DNA from: Trichosphaerium sp. ATCC 40318
Lineage: Eukaryota > Protista > Tubulinea
Direction of reading: 5' to 3'
DNA: 64,000 nt
Assembly: GCA_038496445.1 (NCBI GenBank)
Contig: JALMLS010000228.1
Coordinates: 248,001-312,000 of the forward strand
In this document: positions 12,786 to 45,343 of the stretch, piece by piece
How positions within the stretch are numbered: the stretch's first letter is position 1
Layout of the letters: each line of letters opens with the position of its first letter
Made by a program: the position numbers and the translations under genes
The notes under the pieces: model-generated
Databases searched by the model: none
What the model was told of the DNA's origin: nothing
The model's input: only the letters and a program-made list of their open reading frames with translations

Positions 12786-14281
12786 ATGACAACTACAAGC
12801 GAGCTACTAGACCTTCCTCTAGAAGTATTAATTTATGTATTAAGAAACGTACCGTCTTTATCGTTACTACGCTCGTTGTCTGTATCTAGAGTATGGCGTA
12901 TGATCATAACAACCGCGCCTGAACTGAAAGTACGGCCATATTCTGTTATTTAACTACAAGTGTTTTTATTTTAACGTTACTGAACGCGTCAACTGATCTA
13001 TTGCTTAGTCTGTTCAGTTTTATACAAAAACACTGTGTTCTGGCCATTTTATTATCAGAGAAAGTCCTACCCCAGTCAGTAAGCGTTCAAAAAAAAAAGG
13101 AAAAAATTCAACTTTTTTGACATGAGAGATCGTAGGCTTGTTCAACCGATTATTCGAAAAAGGTAGCTTTCTATGCTTGACAAGAGCGCAATTACTTGTT
13201 TACGAAACAGAAAACAAGGTGTGATATGCAATTAATCGAGCTTTTTTACTATTAATGAATAGTCAATGACACTTCTTTTCGAAATAGGAAAATTTAGTTC
13301 TTACTATTCCGCATGAAACAACAAATCTATATATTCATAAGGAATATATTCTCTGCGACTATAAGACAATATTGCGTGGTGGACTTAGAACTTTGAGGTT
13401 TTATGTACCAACGATAGGAGGGGGTTATCGTCCTGATATACAAACATGGTGTGATTATGCTAAAGAGTTGTACGTTCACAACATTGCCACGAGCTCCAGC
13501 AATTAATCTGGTTTTCTTTAACTGCTCGTCATAGCCGAAATACTTACAGGGAAAAGAGGAAAATTCTCGTACTTGGAGCTGCAAGAGTTGGTAAAACAAA
13601 GTTTATTGAGAGATATGTTACTGGTAGTCTATCAAATAATGAATATAAACCGACTATTGCAGTTGAAAAGGTATCTTTAATATTTGTAAATCACGTGACT
13701 CAAAGTTGATTTTCATCACTAGAGTATTAAACGTACAGAACACACATTCGAGGAGCACACATACAGAACAAAAATAGATATATGGGACCTGAGTGGAGAC
13801 TTAGAATATAATGTAAGATCTATGAAAATTGTACTACTGTTTCTTTTTAATTGTACTATTTCTCTACATGAAGATACAGCTTACTAAAATTGTTATTTAG
13901 AAAGTGGGTATTAGATGGAGTTATATAAGAGATGCAACAAGTTTGATTCACATATTCGATGTTACAGATCCAACGTCATTTGAAACAACACAAATGCTTT
14001 TACAATATTTCACATCATCAACAAAACCTATATTGATTGTAGGTAATAAAATGGACCAACAAAAAGATAGAAAAGTTTCTTCTGAGCAAGGTAAAGAACT
14101 TGCACGAAAACATAATGGAGTGTATCTCGAAACATCTGTGAAATATAATATCAATGGTACTAGTATAAAGTGTACTTGTAGATACTGACTTTTTTGTGTT
14201 GTAGTAAAACAGTGTTTTGACATTGTCGAAAGACTAACTGTAGAGAAAAAGGAATTTAGGCTACCTCGCGCCTTGTGTTAA
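12786..14281 (+). CDS. F-box + probable PH domain + Ras-family small GTPase fusion
   Basis: F-box LLDLPLEVLIYVL...VSRVWR; PH-like FLCLTRAQLLVYE...DIQTW; G-boxes GAARVGKT, PT, WDLSG, NKMD, ETSVK; ends RALC*. Middle exon boundaries are uncertain. Confidence 0.75.
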
Positions 14282-26331: not shown

Positions 26332-27757
26332 ATGGCTCAAAAAGTAATAGTTGCAGGTGGCACAGGGTTTATTGGTCGTCAGTTGGTGACTAAACTAAAA
26401 TCAAAGGGTCACGAGGTAAGAAAAGTGTTACTTCCTTTAAACCAATTATGAGCCTGTATTAACGTCGTTTTAGGTACTCGTTGTGTCTCGTAAGGCCACA
26501 AAACCAGATTTGACATGGGACGGTATAAAAGAGTCCGGGATACCCGAGTGCAACGCTATTATTGCGTTACAAGGTGAAGGCATTGCAAAACAGGTACTTT
26601 GACCATTTCTCCGCTGATGTCATCTCAAAATGAAGTAAAATGTAGCCTATTATACTTAACTACGCTATAGCGATGGACTAAAGCTAGAAAAAAGTTATTG
26701 ATAGACTCACGAGTCGAAACAACAAAACTCCTCATCGAAAAGGCTAAAAACCTCGCCAAACCACCTAAATATATAGCTACATCAGCGATAGGGTGAGTTT
26801 CTTATTTACAACGACTAAACTGAACTCACACCAATTAAGCTATTACCCAACACAACGGCCTGAACTAATGGATGAAACTTATGATGGTCCTGTAGCAGCA
26901 AATTTTGCAGGTACGGTTTTGTTGACACTTCAGTTTTTTTTGTAGTTGTTTTGGCTTTCATTGAACTTTCCTCCGTTTGATTACTTTCTATAGGTTCACT
27001 GTGTAAAACACTTGAAGATACAGTTAAAGATGGTGTGAAAGATAGTAAAATAAAAGCAACTACAGTCAGGATGGGCGTAGTGATGGGTCACGGAGGTAAG
27101 TATTGCACTTTCAATAATTTGTTTACCTAATACAGTTTTTCTTAATCTACAGGTGCTTTAGCAGAGATGACACTACCTTTCGGTATTTATGCTGGACGTA
27201 TTGGAGATGGAACCCACTACTTCCCATGGATCCACCAAAGTACGTACCTTACCTACCGTTTACCGAACGAAGACTTTTGTAGTTTTTTGTTTGAATTCAA
27301 TCTCAAGTTCTGGGTTGTACAACTCGTTTACACCTTCTTGTCTAATGTTCTCTGCTTCAGACGATGCTGTTAGTATTTACGAATACATACTAAACAACGA
27401 AATTGAAGGTATTGTGAACGCTGTTGGTCCTCAACCAGCAACAAGTATGGATGTTGCAAATGCTATTACGAAATGTGGTAAATTCGCAATGCCTGCACCT
27501 GCAATTATGATGCAAATAATGTTGGGTGAGAGTTCAGTACTTCTTACAGAAGGACAGAAGGTAAGTACTAAATTTTGAGGTCTACTTGCTACACGTGACC
27601 AACAACAATCCACATACAAAAACAACTTTTTTTTTCACTTTGAGGTGACTTCTTTACTCTTACACTATTTTAGTTGGCTCCAAAATGTATGCTTGATAAT
27701 GGCTTCAAGTTCGAGTTTGATACAATAGATAAATGTATGAAAGACTTGATTAGTTAA
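26332..27757 (+). CDS. SDR39U1: Epimerase family protein SDR39U1 (TIGR01777-like)
   Basis: VIVAGGTGFIG, RWT...DSRVETT, TSAIGYY, RMGVV, G.IGDGTHYFPWIH.DD, GIVNAVGP, LL.EGQK...GFKFEF. Confidence 0.9.
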
Positions 27758-28149: not shown

Positions 28150-31100
28150 TTATGGTTGAAATTGCTTCAATATAACGCTCTTCATTGCCATGATATCCTG
28201 TGCCATCTTATCATCAACAATGGACTCATTCAAATTAATCATTGACAATTGATTAGCACTCTCTCTCATAAACGAATCAAGTTTCTACAAGGGAAAAAAA
28301 CAGTTAGCAAAAAAGCTTGGTTCACTTGAAATAAAAAATCATTTACCTCAGCATGTTCAATGAAGGATATGTATTGAGACCGTTGCTCGTCAGTTTTGAT
28401 ACAAAGTTGAATCAAACGCATGTAAGATATGAGTAACATCCTAGCTGATTTATAATCATCTTCATCAGCCAAGGAAGCACTTTTTGAAATTCCATAATGC
28501 CCAATTATATCAACACGTGCTGAAGCTAAGTTATCAATAGCGTTCTTTGCTAAAAGCATATATGAGAACAAATAAATGTACACAATAATTCTAGTACTTG
28601 ATTTAACAGTTTTAGTAACAACTGTGAGAAACTTAGCACCACTAAGGCTTGTCCATGATATTTGTGCTTGGAATGGTATTTCTGAATTATGATTTTTTGG
28701 ATCATCCTTCACATTAAAAGCTACTGTGATACCAGAATCTTTATTAGCATTTCCGGGCAATAATTTTTTGATGTTCGCGGCTACAAAAAAGACACGTGAG
28801 TTCGTACAATAAAGATAAAAATGCAACAAAAAAAAAAAGGAGAATTTGAGCGTTTTCTTTTCAATGACGTACTTGCATCATCCCATGTGACACGCTTCTC
28901 AGCGATAAGATCGACTGCAATATTTAAGGCAGTGACGGGTTTAGAATCGCCTAATTTACCAGTTTCCATGTCTCTCAGAGACATGACTTTTACAAAACCA
29001 GAAGTCAAATCAGATAGTGTGCCAATAACAGATAATCCACAATCTTCACCTTCAAGCGAAATCACATCAATCTGCGTTCCGTAATCACGTGCTTCTAATC
29101 CGACATCTCTATAGAAAGCCTACGAAAACAGTAACTAAGAAGTCTATAATGAAGTACAGATCAAAGGTTGACTTGTTGAACAAAACCAACTGCTTTTTGC
29201 GTACACTTGTTTCTTCTTTGTTAATGGATTTAATGTTACCAATCCCAATGTTAGAAAATCCATCAGTACACAGCAAAATCCTTGACCCAGGTGCATTTGC
29301 TGTCATTCCTACCGCAACAGCGATAGCAGGACCAAGAGCTGTTTCACCATACGGATTCACTTCAAGCTTTGAGAGAAATATTAAGACAAACGAAATTAAA
29401 TTTTATAAAAAAGACTCGTACCTTGCTCATCACATCATTGAACTTTGATGGATTTAAGAAGTTAGATTTATGCTTTACATATAATGATTCACCATGTTTA
29501 ATCAATTGTTCATACGTCTTAGCTGTTACAGCAGCAGACACTACTTCAGACTTTTTATCGCTTAAAGTTAATTGGACTTTTGAATTAAACGTCATCATGG
29601 CGATTCGCGCATTTGGAGATTCCACAATCTACAAAGATAATGAGTACTTAATATGTACTTAAACAAATAATGAAGGGTATTGATTTGCCAGAAAGCCCAT
29701 AAAATAGAAAACTCAGGAGAACTAAACTGTTCATACCATTTTTTTAATTTGTTTTGAAATCATTGTAAGAACACAGTCTCTTCTATTCTTGTAACTATCA
29801 CGAACCATAGGGGCTATAACATAGGGTTTTAAAAATAAATCACATGCAATTGTAAAAACCACGTGATTCCCGTACAAACGATGGATACCGATGTTTCAGG
29901 AACAAAAATGACTTCACCATCATCAACCTGAATACCGGATTGACCTGCAGCATAAAGACCTTCTAGAACATAAACAGCTCCTTTTTCTAATTCAATAGCT
30001 CTTGAAGATTGACTATCATCAAGCTTAAAGTCAGCCTTAGCGACATAAGTCCCATCTTAAGCAACCATTATTATTTAAAAAAAAACTGCAAAAAATAAAT
30101 AGTCTTTAAAAACACTCTTTGTTTACGAACCTTTTTTTTCCTCAACATAAGTGCTTGGTACTGCTCCTCTCTTGCTCTTATCACTTTGTTTATGCATGGC
30201 TAACCACGCAGGTAAATACCAATCATTGACGAATTTATATCTGTCACCCTTCTTTAAGTTGTATCTTGCGTTTTTTTCAGTAACAATAACTTCATCTTTT
30301 ACCATCTCTATTATACCCCCTGGTGTTGAAGCTATAGGTATACTACCCATAGATCCACTTAAATCAATACAGAAAATACAAAGAGGTTCCTCATTTGATA
30401 CTTTTGGACCACTTGCGATGGTATACTCTTGGATATTTTCAGATAATTTTTTAGGTTTCGATTTGAAGCGATTATTTGCATTACAAAATTCACACTTCCA
30501 AACCCACTGGACACCTTTCTTTTCTACTTTACTGAAAAAAAACAAGATGTTAGAACCATGGAATTTTAAAGACATTCAAGCAAATAAGGTATGTACCTGT
30601 GTTGGTTTAAGATTGCTCTACAATTTCTGTTCATACAATAAACAACATCTTCCTTTTGAAGTTTGTCACGTGGGTGTTTGGATTCTGCTAGGTGTCCGAA
30701 AGGAATGTATGCTATATTCGTGTTTGCTTTTGCATATTCGTTTGCCTTAACTAGCAAATAGAGGTAAGCTTGAATATTACAAGCACTTTGTTTTACTAAA
30801 CTTACTTTGTTCATCTTTTTTATCTTTGTTTGGAGAAGCTTTATCTTTCTCGGTATCCCCGATTTTGTAAGGCAAGTTTAAGGATGTTTTGCACATAGTA
30901 TGACCGATAGTTGGTCCTGAGGAATCATAAGCACCACACAGAACAACTACGAAAAAAACACGGAATGTGTACATACCACTTTCTTCATATTGTTTTCGGG
31001 TAACATAACGCAAGAGTTTACTAGCGACAGATGTACCAATGAATGCCGTTTGATCTCTATTTTCTGGGGCTGAAATAACAACCTTTTGACAAAGATTAGT

Positions 31101-33641
31101 TAGTGGATAAACGAAATAACTTATCGATTTATAAATATAAAGACTTATGAGCAGTAAACGCACTGGTAAGTCTCCTCTGTACTTCTTTAGTTCTATCTAT
31201 TGTTTCAATTATTAGTCATTATGTATATTACAAATAATGACGCACTTCCAATCTCTTCACAACACCTGGAAGCATAGATCCACCTAATGTCCAGCAATGT
31301 CAAACACAAAAAAAAAGTCAGATTATAGTTCATTACCTCCACCAATAACAATGTTATTCCACATATCTTCTTGAATCTCTAGAGGACATCTTTTTATACT
31401 TTGAATAACAACATCAACAAGACCCAATTCTTTACTATCTACCAAGCTTGGTGTAAACAAAACCTCACCGACTCTGAATCTAGAAAAAAATTGATAAGCA
31501 TTTCACTTCTAAAATAGCCATCGTTTACCTCTCATCACTTAATTTGACGGTATACTTCTCATCATTGTATGGAATCTCACACTCCTTTTCATGCGTTTTA
31601 ATAAATTCTGGGTCATCTTTTAAACCCATCTCTTTTTTAAAGTCCTCAGCAACATAACACAACTTCTACAAACCAGTAAGATACTTATTCAAATTTTCCT
31701 TTATAAAAAAAAACAAACAAAATAAACGTGACAGAAGCTGGCCTACTACAAATATGTTTGATGTTTTAAATTCATCCATGTACCTCCTTAATTTCCTTTG
31801 CAACACATAACATCTCACGACCAGTCTGTATATTCTGTTCTAAAAAATAAAGCTAAGTAAAGAGAAGACCTGCACTTTTTTGTAGTCGAACCTTTTGCAC
31901 AAAGTAATTTTTCAAGATACTCAGTTAAAGTATCACCTCCTACACTACTTTGTACACAAGAAGCGCTTATGCCATACATATTATAAATTGGTGTAACCCT
32001 CATCTCTTCGGCACCAATATCAACTGATAAACCAGTCTCTTTTGCTAAACAGAGTCAATTTGCATATTTGGAAAATCACATCTTTTGAACAAACAAAAGC
32101 TGCCCCAACTCTACATAGTTACTAAATGGCTTCACACTAACGTACATGATTCAAAAATTCTAGCTTGGGCTGAACTAATAAAAGCAAGACGAGACACTTT
32201 TAATTCCTCGAACGCGACTAAAAACAACATAAATATTAAGTCCCAGCTTACTTATAAGTTAGCAAAAACAAACGTACACTCTGTAATGAACCCACGTAAC
32301 TTATCATTGGATTTAGGGTGCTCTATAAACACGAGTGGATAATCTTTCTTTTCAGCTATACCGAGTTTATCAACAGCGTGCCTTAGCAACTAGTATCAAC
32401 AGTTTAGAAAAAAAAAAGTATTCATCTAAACCACGTGCGTGTTCAGCGGTTCCTACTGTGTATAATTGACCTTTAACAACAGGTTTATATATGTGAAACA
32501 TTGCGCCAAGAAGATATTTACGTTTTGTATTCACAATTTCACCCACGTAATGGCGCTCTAGGCATTTGTTTCAACAAAGAAAAAAAAAACACTAACAAGA
32601 TATTCTTTACGTACTTGTCATGCCAGTTAATCCAGGGATTACACCACATCCACTTCGTTTGCGCGCTGCAATTGTTCTAAATATATAATCAACAAACAAT
32701 GACTAAAAGACAAAAGCCACGGTAAACAGAAAAGTTAACAACAAAATAAAAAGCAACTCACTGAAAAATACAAGTAGGTTTTTCATCACCAACATAACCA
32801 ACTCGGCAAAAATTAGATCCCATGTCCTATGGAAAAAAACACGTGTAAGTCAACTGAACAACTGCTAGGCTTTGAAGGCTTTTTCCTTGACTCACAAAGG
32901 CTACGATCTTTTCTTGATTCTTTCCAATAACACTTGCACCTTCATCATTATTGGCATGTTCTATGATCTCAGCAAGCTATCATATGAAGTTAGAACCCAA
33001 TACATTAACACACCACAAATATGTCGTACATCTCCTTCCTTGAGGTCATACACAACTGATATTTCTTCGATGGATTTACCACCTGCTACAAGCTTTTTTA
33101 TTTCATCGTCGACTGTGCTCTTAGAATCCTGTTCCTTAGCTTTACCCTTTTGGATATATAAGCCTCTTCAAGTGAGCTATTAATATTGGTGTACCTTTTG
33201 ATAAGGTCTTCGTTCAGAAGGAGGCAAACTCTGGTTGAGTTTGGCTGCTTTTTGTTTCTTTTCTTGAATGGTTTTTTGCCTTCTAACTTCAGCAGCCATT
33301 GACGCTAAACAAACATGAACCTACGTTCTGGGCGCCAGTACAAGGGCGAAAGAGTGTTTAATACCTAAATTTAACCCAAAAGCCTTTGTAGATACACTTT
33401 GGTCCTTTTTATCATTGGAAGCTTCTATCAATGCGTATTAAGTCGTTTACAGGCCATAAAGTTAGTTTTTAGTAGTTTTCGAACGTACCATGTTTTTCTG
33501 CCAATTCTGCTGTACCACCTTGCAGCTCATCTAATATTGTATTTATTGGTAGCTGTACAAGTTTGATTTAAAAGTACAAGAATAGATCTCTTCGTTTTCA
33601 TCCTTTTCAGGCGCATATACCACTGCTGAACCAAATTCCAT
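28150..33641 (-). CDS. Actin-related domain fused to a Cpras/Sec23-type Zn finger + vWA domain with SH3-like inserts
   Basis: N-terminus MEFGSAVVY. Actin motifs DMGSNFCRVG, DIGAEEMRVTPIY, KEIKE|KLCYVAEDF, RFRVGEVLFTP, MWNNIVIGG|GGSMLPG, YEES|GPTI. Then C..NC.AIL...WKCEFC, IFCIDLSGSM, GETALGPAIAVA, ILLCTDGFSNIGIG, FQAQISWT. Confidence 0.8.
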
Positions 33642-43570: not shown

Positions 43571-45343
43571 CTAGCAAACATCCATCGGTGATGGAGAAGC
43601 ATCATTATACAGAGGTGATCGTTGATAAGGCGCTGATGCTGTGTACTTTGGTTTTTCCATAAAAAATCGTGAAGCATGAGCAAACAGCGTGTGAAAAGTT
43701 TTTTTGTTTTGCAACTCCGAAAGCATCTCTTCAATTTCAATATCAGATAGAAGCCGATAGTTATGCGCGTGGCCATTTCTGAGCACATTACTAGCATCAG
43801 AGAGCATCTTTTGAGCTTCCAAAAATTGTCCGTTTGTTGCAAGTTTTGAGGCTTTAACAAGCGTAATAGCGGCTTTGAATCGCGAGAGGTTCTGATCCAA
43901 GCTGAAAGGCATAAGTTCTTCGTGCTCGCAAACCTGCGGCCGCTGGACATTTAATTCGCTCGAAATCTGCTCGCTTACTCCAGATGAAAACAAACTATAG
44001 CTCGTCTGGAAGAATAAGGTAAGTTTACGCGCTTTGCAGTATTTGTTGATTGAATAAATAAAAAAAGCCGTTGGTTTCGATATCACTCCAAAGAAGCGCG
44101 AAACGGACACAAATAAATCAAATAGCGATTACTACCAAATCGTAAAAAAGAAGGCGGTTGGAAGGTTTTTTTTTTTGGTATGCGCTACGAATGGGATAAA
44201 ACTTGCGTAGTTGTGGCACTAAGCGAGTTTTGAAGGGTTTCTCGTGAAAACATGAGAAGAACTAAAAAGCAAAAAAAAAAGCTTTAAACGGGACTCAAGC
44301 GCACGTACTTGTACTTTGAGTAGCTTGTGGCAATCTATTGGTTGATTCATTCGCCTGAGAGATAACTTCACAATAATTGTCTTCGTTTCTCCCCTCGACA
44401 TACGACCAACATTAACACTGTATTCCTTTAGTTTTTTGTGCGGTTCAATCGCGTAGTTTGTAGCTAACGTGATTATACGCGCTCCATCCAAAGCTTTTAT
44501 GAATACTGTAGAGTCTGTGGCGCACGTAGTCGTGAGCTGATTCGCGCACTCTAGGAGAGCGGAGACCATGTCTGTGCCGTTTTCAACGTAATAGTACATG
44601 CCTCGCGTCTCGTTCGCTAGAGCGTATAGAAGGGCAGAATCGTGGTCATCGCCAATACCAAAAGTGTGTATTACAGCATGTTTCGCTCCACACTCTGCTT
44701 TTTGTTTCTGTTGTTGTTTTACTTGTTGTATGAATGTTTGGTTTGAAACGCCGCGGTTTGAAGCTCCATCGGTGAATAAAAATATAGCCGGTACGCGATT
44801 TTCTTTTGCGGCTACCGCTTGATATTCGGGAGCGTCAAAGAGTGATAAAGCTGTGAAAAGAGCATCTGAAATATTCGTTGAACCATGAGGTTTGATGTTA
44901 TCACGCAAATGCTTCTCTAGCCTCTTCAAGTTTGGTGCTGTGGCGGGTTCGTACTTGCAAACCGTAGAAACGATGTGGTTGTATGTTACGACGCTGATCG
45001 TATTAAGTTCACCCAAAGTATCGAATACGGCACCCAATCCATCTAGAACTTTATCCATGCGATTGTGGTTTTTCATACTAGCAGAAACATCCAACACAAA
45101 TACAAAGTCCACAACAGGGTGATAATCACCTTGAGAGGTACCAGTAGAAGAGGCGATGAGGTCTTGGGCCTTTAGTTGAATAGTCGCCCAGCAGGTCGGG
45201 GCGTGATTGTAAGGCAAATGCGTCGCCTGTATCTCTGTTTTGAGGGTAAGAGTGCTTCGAGTTTGTACCCTAGAGGAAGATTGCTCTTCCCCTTGTTGAT
45301 TATCCGACCCGCCCCAAGCTGCGCTATACGATACGTTGTTCAT
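43571..45343 (-). CDS. vWA-domain protein (one intron 44006-44308)
   Basis: FVLDVSASM (MIDAS), GSTNISDAL, FLFTDG, IHTFGIGDDHD, GMYYYVE. Confidence 0.88.

What the first reader, a model, noticed from the sequence alone, without database searches (positions are those of the whole stretch)
28150..33641. Actin fold occupying the Ras slot of a Cpras-like Zn-finger/vWA protein
Seen: a continuous spliced frame from MEFGSAVVY through a complete divergent actin domain (~32830-30890) into KANTNI...CxxxxC...CEFC and a Sec23/24-like vWA trunk. Known: Dictyostelium Cpras proteins pair a circularly permuted Ras domain with this C-terminal module. Inference: an undescribed actin-related fusion in which an ATP-binding switch replaces the GTPase, perhaps linking a COPII-like trunk to the cytoskeleton.
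Basis: partly seen in the sequence, partly recalled or inferred. Interest (0 to 1): 0.75.

Follow-up and report, generated by a model that had tools for sequence, protein, structure and literature searches.

The report
Divergent actin fused to Sec23-like adaptor
This amoeba gene very probably makes one 1,197-residue protein that joins a badly worn actin fold to a metal-binding adaptor built like the COPII coat proteins Sec23/24; it belongs to a widespread protist family that no paper I could find describes.

Summary
On the minus strand, 33641 to 28150, 29 exons joined by 28 GT-AG introns (47-118 nt) give one open frame of 1,197 codons. The order is N-terminal extension, actin fold, short linker, four-cysteine finger, and a vWA trunk with a complete MIDAS motif, beta-sandwich and helical domain.

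The layout is not unique. At least 55 database proteins (Tubulinea, Archamoebae, dinoflagellates, a choanoflagellate) have the same order in single transcripts, and the window gene aligns with them from end to end. In a tree of the C-terminal module it lies inside the actin-type clade (100/99). That clade is the nearest neighbour of the cpRAS-type clade (98/84), so "actin in the Ras slot" is a fair description.

The "ATP switch" part is not supported. Q137 is lost in almost the whole family. This copy has also lost G15, K18, D157, G158 and H161, and it matches the family actin consensus at only 32%.

This copy carries an SH3-like insert next to the MIDAS motif, which no aligned relative shows.

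No RNA run was listed, so the 55-nt junction intron is inferred from homology and splice signals.

The scan had already noted a paralogous actin-Sec23-like gene on another piece of this genome (s1-390569).

The parts
28150..33641 (-). Whole gene: 29 exons, 28 GT-AG introns, 1,197-codon ORF (ATG 33641, stop 28152-28150)
   Evidence: Model built from the window in a script; intron statistics; end-to-end collinearity with family members
32896..33641 (-). N-terminal extension, exons 1-6 (aa 1-152). The first 35 aa (33641-33490) carry the family's conserved N-terminal motif M-x-F-G-S ... E-x-I-Y ... D/G-G
   Evidence: Family N-terminal HMM matches model residues 1-66, E 2.8e-8; tblastn of P0165 residues 1-20 to 33641-33582
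30891..32913 (-). Divergent actin-fold domain (aa 147-520, end of exon 6 to exon 19). P1 loop at 32826-32794 (DMGSNFCRVGY), P2 loop at 32024-31995 (VDIGAEEMRV), adenine loop at 31343-31264
   Evidence: Pfam Actin on exons 32761-32826, 31818-32054 and 31326-31502; family actin HMM E 3.9e-70 over profile positions 3-372 of 374; site table
30806..30890 (-). Lys/Asp-rich linker that continues the frame past the normal actin C-terminus (rest of exon 19)
   Evidence: Direct reading; aligned with the longer low-complexity linkers of relatives
30751..30805 (-). Junction intron 19 (55 nt, GTAAGT...TAG). It must be spliced out for the fusion; retention gives the TAA at 30779-30777
   Evidence: Typical of the other 27 introns. 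No RNA evidence available
30483..30750 (-). Exon 20 and the start of exon 21: family motif ANTNIAYIPFG (30727-30695) and the four-Cys finger, CMNRNC (30637-30620) plus CEFC (30494-30483)
   Evidence: Alignment with family members; weak Pfam zf-Sec23_Sec24 hit; coordinates
28873..30365 (-). vWA / Sec23-24 trunk with a complete MIDAS motif: DLSGS 30365-30351, Thr of GETALGPA 29348-29325, Asp of LLCTDG 29276-29259
   Evidence: Family C-terminal HMM E 4e-107; MIDAS residues are invariant in the family; Pfam Sec23_trunk weak hit
30138..30269 (-). SH3-like insert, seen only in this copy, in the same exon as the MIDAS DxSxS (aa 688-731)
   Evidence: phmmer against PDB: BTK SH3 E 0.005, and about 55 of 60 listed hits are SH3 domains covering query 19-60. 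Pfam gives no hit. Absent from the 45 aligned relatives
29877..30053 (-). Second copy-specific insert (exon 22, 59 aa), nature unknown
   Evidence: No Pfam hit; one weak PDB hit, E 0.24
28150..28872 (-). Beta-sandwich and C-terminal helical domain (exons 27-29) with the family C-terminal motifs (AEKLDSFMRE 28352-28261)
   Evidence: Weak Pfam Sec23_BS hit; tblastn to P0165 and P0166; fold of the homologous module

Best explanation
This is one gene encoding a 1,197-residue cytosolic protein. It is a fast-evolving paralogue within a widespread protist family. The family layout is a conserved N-terminal motif, an actin domain, a flexible linker, a four-Cys finger, and a Sec23/24-like module (trunk/vWA with intact MIDAS, beta-sandwich, helical domain, no gelsolin domain). 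Shown: the gene structure, family membership, the Sec23/24-like fold of the module in a relative, loss of the actin catalytic residues, and an SH3-like insert. Inferred mechanism: the Sec23/24-like module is the working part. It acts as a metal-dependent (MIDAS) adaptor that grips an acidic residue of a partner, as other MIDAS vWA domains do. The N-terminal nucleotide-fold domain (cpRAS, plain Ras or actin, depending on the clade) is a flexibly tethered targeting or regulatory head. In most family members the actin head is nearly conventional on its surface but cannot hydrolyse ATP, so it probably plugs the adaptor into actin filaments or actin-binding proteins. In this copy the head has lost phosphate-loop glycines and much of its surface. 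Here it most likely serves as a nucleotide-independent protein-binding scaffold, with the inserted SH3-like domain providing a new handle for proline-rich partners.
For: The gene model has 28 canonical short introns and no stop. 55 proteins carry Pfam Actin plus VWA_2 or Sec23_trunk in one ORF. They come from Copromyxa, Pyxidicula, Mastigella, Mastigamoeba, Stephanoeca and several dinoflagellates. One relative is held as a 3.95-kb single-ORF contig ending in poly(A). The window gene aligns end to end with these proteins, including the N-terminal and C-terminal motifs. The family C-terminal HMM scores E 4e-107 and the actin HMM E 3.9e-70 against the model. In the careful tree the gene groups with Pyxidicula, Copromyxa and P0107 (99/99) inside the actin-type clade (100/99), and actin plus cpRAS clades form one bipartition at 98/84. 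A profile of the module hits Sec24A at 1.9e-10 and Sec23A at 1.4e-5 in PDB. The AF2 model (pLDDT 85.8) matches Sec23/Sec24 by Foldseek at E 1e-24 to 1e-17, TM about 0.6. The MIDAS D-x-S-x-S, T and D are invariant in the family and kept here. The site table shows Q137 lost in 45 of 46 members and D154 kept in only 3; this copy has G15N, K18R, Q137S, D157A, G158E and H161R. The copy keeps 74% of the family's >=90%-conserved columns in the C-terminal module but only 52% in actin. Full-length AF2 of P0124 gave two confident modules, a disordered linker and pTM 0.51.
Against: There is no transcript evidence for this locus: no RNA run was listed. No protein more than 50% identical to the MIDAS exon turned up among representatives of 15 billion proteins. 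The fusion therefore rests on one inferred 55-nt intron. The end branch is three times the median (2.0 against 0.68), which could also mean relaxed selection. The SH3 assignment is weak (E 0.005, no Pfam hit). All functional statements (MIDAS ligand, actin-filament or partner binding) are inference; nothing in this family has been studied. The exon 9/10 junction removes about 8 residues relative to other actins and might be mis-modelled.
Confidence: 0.72

Rival explanations
1. Two transcription units: an actin-like gene whose mRNA keeps the 55-nt 'intron' and stops at the TAA at 30777, and a separate zinc-finger/vWA gene with its own start.
For: No RNA data for this locus. An ATG at 30814, in another frame of exon 19, opens an ORF that reads through the intron into the zinc-finger exon (ORF 30566-30814). 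Finger-vWA proteins without any N-terminal domain exist in other taxa (PMC2430557).
Against: In the family the two halves are always on one transcript. Exon 20 has no in-frame ATG before the first Cys of the finger. The alternative start lies inside the actin coding exon, so a promoter would have to sit within the actin gene. The intron has typical signals and length. Exon 20 begins just upstream of the family's ANTN motif. The C-terminal module belongs to the actin-type clade, not to a headless clade.
Confidence: 0.07
2. A decaying, functionless duplicate: a paralogue of the conventional family member in this genome that is drifting and perhaps not expressed.
For: Very long branch. Actin domain at 32% of consensus against 38-84% for the others. 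Loss of near-invariant family residues. No RNA holder listed, although other genes of this genome are reported as expressed in earlier notes. No close relative in the large protein library.
Against: A 3,594-nt frame stays open across 29 exons at 37% G+C with all 56 splice signals intact. The MIDAS motif and all four finger cysteines are kept, as are 74% of highly conserved C-terminal columns. It has gained an ordered-looking SH3-like insert. Divergence is concentrated in one domain rather than spread evenly.
Confidence: 0.12
3. One reading: the actin fold is still an ATP-binding conformational switch that takes over the role of the GTPase and controls the Sec23-like module.
For: D11, G13, S14, D154, G156, K213, E214, G301 and G302 are kept in this copy. 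Some actin-related proteins bind ATP without hydrolysing it (general knowledge). The actin-type clade is the neighbour of the cpRAS-type clade, so a like-for-like swap of nucleotide-binding heads is plausible.
Against: G15N and G158E put side chains into the two phosphate-clasping hairpins. D157A, Q137S, H161R and K18R remove metal, water and phosphate contacts. Q137 and D154 are lost across nearly the whole family. AF2 gives no confident head-to-module docking in a relative (pTM 0.51).
Confidence: 0.09

Closest known systems
CPRas1-type cpRAS-VWA proteins (Elias and Novotny 2008, PMC2430557)
   Same: The same C-terminal half: a four-Cys finger followed by a vWA / Sec23-24 trunk and downstream domains. 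The C-terminal modules of the two groups are nearest neighbours in the tree (98/84).
   Different: The head is an actin fold, not a circularly permuted Ras. No GTPase motifs were found on any exon. There is an extra conserved N-terminal extension.
Sec23/Sec24, inner COPII coat
   Same: Finger, trunk, beta-sandwich and helical domains in the same order. Profile hits to Sec24A, Sec24 and Sec23A. Foldseek E down to 7e-24 with TM about 0.6 for a relative's module.
   Different: No gelsolin-like domain. A complete, invariant MIDAS motif. About 14% sequence identity. A covalently attached head rather than a separate Sar1 partner. No evidence of COPII function.
Unnamed actin-finger-vWA proteins in databases (e.g. 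Copromyxa protea P0165, Pyxidicula operculata P0166, Mastigamoeba balamuthi 'putative actin' P0133, Stephanoeca P0175, dinoflagellate transcripts)
   Same: Identical domain order and N- and C-terminal motifs; loss of Q137; same clade.
   Different: This copy's actin is far more diverged (32% against 38-84% of consensus). It has lost phosphate-loop glycines. It has CX4C instead of CX2C in the first finger knuckle. It carries about 110 extra residues, including an SH3-like domain, after the MIDAS motif.
Other actin-fold proteins with extra domains (actin-related proteins; Dictyostelium filactin; from my own knowledge, not tested here)
   Same: An actin fold used as one module of a larger protein, often with degenerate nucleotide sites.
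   Different: None of those that I know of carries a Sec23/24-like vWA module. Here the extra module is C-terminal to actin.

Membership tests
Actin family (Pfam PF00022) | Collinear match to the whole actin fold | tested here: met
   Three exons hit Pfam Actin, two above the cut-off (35.1 and 39.3 bits against 27). The family actin HMM covers positions 3-372 of 374, E 3.9e-70.
Actin family (Pfam PF00022) | Conserved ATP-binding and hydrolysis residues (D11, G13-S14-G15, K18, Q137, D154, G156-D157-G158, H161) | tested here: not met
   G15N, K18R, Q137S, D157A, G158E and H161R; 9 of 18 checked sites kept.
Actin family (Pfam PF00022) | Conserved filament-contact surface (D-loop, plug, C-terminus) | tested here: inconclusive
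   The D-loop region is rewritten with a 3-residue insertion, and only 52% of >=90%-conserved family columns are kept. No conventional actin reference or assay was available.
CPRas1-type cpRAS-VWA | Circularly permuted Ras domain (G3-G4-G5-G1-G2) | tested here: not met
   No Ras-type Pfam hit on any exon. The slot holds actin. True cpRAS members show split Ras hits (P0174, P0200).
CPRas1-type cpRAS-VWA | Four-Cys finger upstream of the VWA / Sec23-24 trunk | tested here: met
   CMNRNC and CEFC align with the near-invariant family cysteines. The C-terminal HMM scores E 4e-107.
Sec23/Sec24 (COPII) | Finger, trunk, beta-sandwich and helical domain order and fold | tested here: met
   Shown for the relative P0165. 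Carried over to the window gene by alignment and weak exon hits.
Sec23/Sec24 (COPII) | C-terminal gelsolin-like domain | tested here: not met
   Only helices follow the beta-sandwich up to the C-terminus. No Gelsolin hit in relatives.
Sec23/Sec24 (COPII) | Works with Sar1 in ER export | not testable with these tools
   No functional data.
Actin-finger-vWA fusion family (unnamed, delimited here) | N-terminal M-x-F-G-S motif, actin, ANTN motif, finger and MIDAS vWA in one frame | tested here: met
Actin-finger-vWA fusion family (unnamed, delimited here) | C-terminal module inside the actin-type clade | tested here: met
   Careful IQ-TREE: 44-row clade at 100/99; subgroup with P0165, P0166 and P0107 at 99/99. 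A long branch was noted.
Actin-finger-vWA fusion family (unnamed, delimited here) | Both halves on one mRNA | not testable with these tools
   No RNA run listed for this locus. Shown only for relatives.
SH3 domain | Recognisable SH3 sequence signature | tested here: inconclusive
   PDB phmmer: BTK SH3 E 0.005, Src, NCK and Fyn SH3 at 0.05-1. Pfam and the Atlas gave nothing. The RT-loop part looks shortened.

The most novel reading that the evidence does not exclude
Actin-finger-Sec23/24-like proteins are an old, widespread and so far undescribed class of adaptors. A non-hydrolysing actin head occupies the position that a circularly permuted Ras holds in the sister clade and couples a MIDAS-based cargo or partner binder to the actin cytoskeleton. 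This locus is a neofunctionalised paralogue that has given up the actin surface and acquired an SH3 handle instead.
Probability: 0.3. Interest if true: 0.75.

Novelty: new variant of a known kind. Interest (0 to 1): 0.58.

Why it matters
Actin is among the most conserved eukaryotic proteins and is rarely found as a module inside larger proteins. Here it sits in front of a Sec23/24-like adaptor in at least four distant eukaryotic groups, with its catalytic glutamine lost almost everywhere. That points to a function for the actin fold that does not depend on ATP turnover. It also shows the same adaptor module paired with three different nucleotide-fold heads: cpRAS, ordinary Ras and actin. This makes the 2008 open question 'what do CPRas proteins do?' approachable by comparison. 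The window copy shows what happens when the head is released from constraint while the adaptor is kept. This suggests that the Sec23-like, MIDAS-bearing half is the essential part.

Tried and rejected
- **RNA evidence:** The look-up of sequencing runs listed no RNA holder and its cap is one call, so read laying could not be used.
- **Big protein search:** the MIDAS exon gave only three weak hits. The gene's own product and close orthologues are therefore not in that library. I reached the family indirectly through P0002, then P0116.
- **Exon-wise Pfam:** most exons give nothing on their own.
- **Inserts:** Pfam and the ESM Atlas gave nothing for either insert. The second insert stays unexplained.
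- **Cis-docking test:** full-length AF2 of P0116 failed. The repeat with P0124 gave pTM 0.51, so I dropped the idea that the head docks on the Sec23-like part as Sar1 does on Sec23. That is only weak negative evidence.
- **P0116 as same-species transcript:** I considered this because P0116 also starts MEFGS. I rejected it because its contigs are 52-53% G+C against 37% here.
- **Later start codon:** I considered a start at MAAEV (33298). I rejected it because the MEFGS motif is conserved in relatives.
- **Joined model:** the joined protein was used only inside local scripts (alignment, HMM, tree). It was never sent to a database search or to structure prediction.
Full report
**What is in the sequence.** The region is eukaryotic DNA of about 37% G+C with many short introns, and the gene lies on the minus strand. 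Starting from the ATG at 33641, I joined 29 exons through 28 GT-AG introns and obtained a 3,594-nt frame ending at the TAA at 28152-28150, which encodes 1,197 residues. Introns are 47-118 nt with a median of 62. Donors are GTA in 22 of 28 and acceptors are TAG in 22 of 28. Mean intron G+C is 31% against 37% for exons, and 25 of the 28 introns would stop the frame if read through. By my own estimate, at this base composition about 7% of random codons are stops, so the open frame is not chance.

**Domain content, exon by exon.** Pfam Actin is hit by exons 32761-32826, 31818-32054 and 31326-31502, the last two above the curated cut-off. Weak zf-Sec23_Sec24, Sec23_trunk and Sec23_BS hits follow downstream in the expected order. 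After the normal actin end (...SGPTIGHTMC) there is no stop. Another 28 codons lead to a GTAAGT donor, then a 55-nt intron, and the next exon continues in frame into ANTNIAYIPFG, CMNRNC, CEFC and the MIDAS motif DLSGS.

**Is the fusion real?**
- No RNA run was listed for this stretch and the cap is one search, so there is no direct transcript evidence.
- A search of 1.84 billion representative proteins with the MIDAS exon found nothing close. The gene's own product is therefore not in public protein sets.
- The weak hit P0002 (Ras + finger + vWA) led by word search to P0116. P0116 led to 55 proteins that combine Pfam Actin with VWA_2 or Sec23_trunk in one ORF of 735-1,467 residues.
- Named sources include Copromyxa protea and Pyxidicula operculata (Tubulinea), Mastigella eilhardi and Mastigamoeba balamuthi (Archamoebae), Stephanoeca diplocostata (choanoflagellate), and Scrippsiella, Biecheleria, Polykrikos and Gymnodinium (dinoflagellates). 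Most are complete transcript ORFs.
- P0116 is carried by three transcript-like contigs with one ORF each. One ends in poly(A), and their 52-53% G+C shows that they come from another organism.
- The window gene aligns with these proteins from the first residues (MEFGS...; relatives begin MNFGS, MEFGS or similar) to the last. Against the locally joined model, family HMMs score E 2.8e-8 (N-terminal motif), 3.9e-70 (actin, 3-372 of 374) and 4e-107 (C-terminal module).
- Exon 20 has no in-frame ATG before the first finger cysteine. The only alternative start, ATG 30814, lies inside the actin exon in another frame.
- I therefore put the single fused gene at roughly 0.9 and the two-gene reading at about 0.07.

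**What the C-terminal half is.**
- A profile of 23 family modules hits Sec24A (1.9e-10), yeast Sec24 (3e-8, finger through beta-sandwich) and Sec23A (1.4e-5) among solved structures.
- AlphaFold2 on P0165:616-1154 gave pLDDT 85.8 and pTM 0.85. Foldseek's top 46 matches are all Sec23 or Sec24 chains (E 7e-24 to 1e-17, TM about 0.6). They are followed by the archaeal ArnA/B Sec23/24-like core and by bacterial vWA proteins.
- The module ends in helices, with no gelsolin-like domain.
- The MIDAS residues (D-x-S-x-S, Thr, Asp) are invariant in the 23 aligned family modules, and the four cysteines are nearly so. The window gene keeps all of them, with CX4C instead of CX2C in the first knuckle.

**Relation to CPRas.** Elias and Novotny (2008, PMC2430557) described cpRAS-VWA proteins with just this finger plus trunk, as well as headless relatives. 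My careful maximum-likelihood tree of 100 C-terminal modules (545 columns) gives:
- an actin-type clade of 44 rows (100/99), comprising 42 actin-bearing proteins and two N-terminally short entries;
- a cpRAS-type clade (100/99);
- a bipartition uniting the actin-type and cpRAS-type clades (98/84);
- a separate amoebozoan clade whose head is an ordinary, non-permuted Ras (100/100).

The window gene sits with Pyxidicula, Copromyxa and P0107 (99/99), on an end branch of 2.0 against a median of 0.68. The tree is unrooted and the branch is long, so placement inside the clade is firm but the exact sister is not. 'Actin in the Ras slot' is thus a fair evolutionary description. The nearest relatives being tubulinean suggests, by inference only, that the genome is a tubulinean amoeba.

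**The actin head.** I numbered sites through the collinear P0165 head.
- The family has almost universally lost Q137: only 1 of 46 members keeps Gln. Asp154 is kept in only 3 of 46 and is mostly Ser or Thr. G15 and G158 vary. K213, E214, G301/G302 and most surface segments stay conserved. Family heads match their own consensus at 38-84%, most of them at 60-84%.
- The window copy matches that consensus at only 32% and reads G15N, K18R, Q137S, D157A, G158E, H161R and K336D. Side chains at G15 and G158 sit in the two phosphate-clasping hairpins (established actin structure, from my own knowledge). Hydrolysis is therefore very unlikely and nucleotide binding is doubtful.
- The copy keeps 74% of the family's >=90%-conserved columns in the C-terminal module but only 52% in the head. 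Constraint has been relaxed mainly on the head.
- Full-length AlphaFold2 of the relative P0124 gave two confident modules joined by a disordered linker (residues 412-470) and pTM 0.51. That is no support for a fixed head-on-module arrangement of the Sar1-Sec23 kind.

**A feature of this copy only.** Right after the MIDAS DxSxS, and in the same 401-nt exon, the window gene has about 110 extra residues that no aligned relative has.
- The first part (30269-30138) matches SH3 domains in the PDB. BTK SH3 scores E 0.005 over most of the domain (the alignment stops short of the RT-loop part), and Src, NCK1, Fyn, Yes and Sla1 SH3 domains make up about 55 of the 60 listed hits. Pfam and the Atlas give nothing, so I call it SH3-like and probable, not proven.
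- The second part (exon 22) is unexplained.

**How it most likely works.**
- Shown: one collinear gene, family membership, a Sec23/24-like module with an intact MIDAS motif, and a non-catalytic head.
- Inferred: the module is a metal-dependent adaptor, and the head is a flexibly tethered targeting or regulatory domain. In typical members the near-conventional but non-hydrolysing actin could dock onto filaments or actin-binding proteins. In this copy the head is more likely a nucleotide-independent scaffold, with the SH3-like insert adding a binding site for proline-rich partners.
- Some family members also carry WW, Deltex-C or U-box domains, which hints at links to ubiquitin ligation. This was not followed up.

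**Novelty.** Six full-text searches found only the 2008 cpRAS paper and nothing on actin joined to a Sec23/24-like or vWA module. The library lacks most subscription journals. Databases label these proteins 'actin', 'putative actin' or 'actin-related protein'. The scan itself had already reported a paralogue with a near-normal actin on another piece of this genome (s1-390569). My independent route reached the same family and the same loss of catalytic residues. I file this as a new variant of a known kind: the CPRas1/Sec23-24-like adaptor with a different head. This locus is its most diverged member seen here.

**Limits.**
- The joined protein has no reference, so it was used only inside local scripts. 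It was not sent to any database search or to structure prediction.
- The exon 9/10 junction, which removes about 8 residues compared with other actins, and the 5' exons rest on splice signals and homology alone.

Noticed in passing
window 13907-14155 (+): An exon encoding the G4/G5 part of a Ras-like small GTPase (...LIVGNKMD...ETSVK...), hit at about 33% identity by the Ras heads of CPRas-type proteins. It is a separate gene.
   Followed up: no
window 44741-44899 (-): Weak tblastn match (E 2.1) of the family's MIDAS Thr/Asp stretch to ...HGSTNISDAL...IFLFTDGASNRG..., which looks like another vWA-domain gene.
   Followed up: no
P0002, P0015 and about 15 other amoebozoan proteins: A whole clade of finger-vWA proteins carries an ordinary, non-permuted Ras head (Pfam Ras 1-159 of 162 in one stretch). 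NCBI nevertheless names some of them 'circularly permutated Ras protein 1'. This is a third kind of head on the same module.
   Followed up: partly
P0142, P0129, P0180: Some actin-finger-vWA proteins carry extra domains: a WW domain before actin (dinoflagellates), a Deltex C-terminal domain between actin and the finger, or a C-terminal U-box. This hints at links to ubiquitin ligation.
   Followed up: partly
PDB 9ya0 chains GA, GB, GF: Sec23/Sec24 chains in the Toxoplasma pre-conoid ring structure are among the best structural matches. This is an instance of this fold in a cytoskeletal assembly.
   Followed up: no
window 29877-30053 (-): Exon 22 encodes a 59-residue insert with no recognisable family. 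It may be a second small beta domain next to the SH3-like one.
   Followed up: partly
window 27189-27578 (+): An ORF on the opposite strand ends about 570 nt from this gene's stop codon, so the two genes appear to converge with a short shared 3' region.
   Followed up: no
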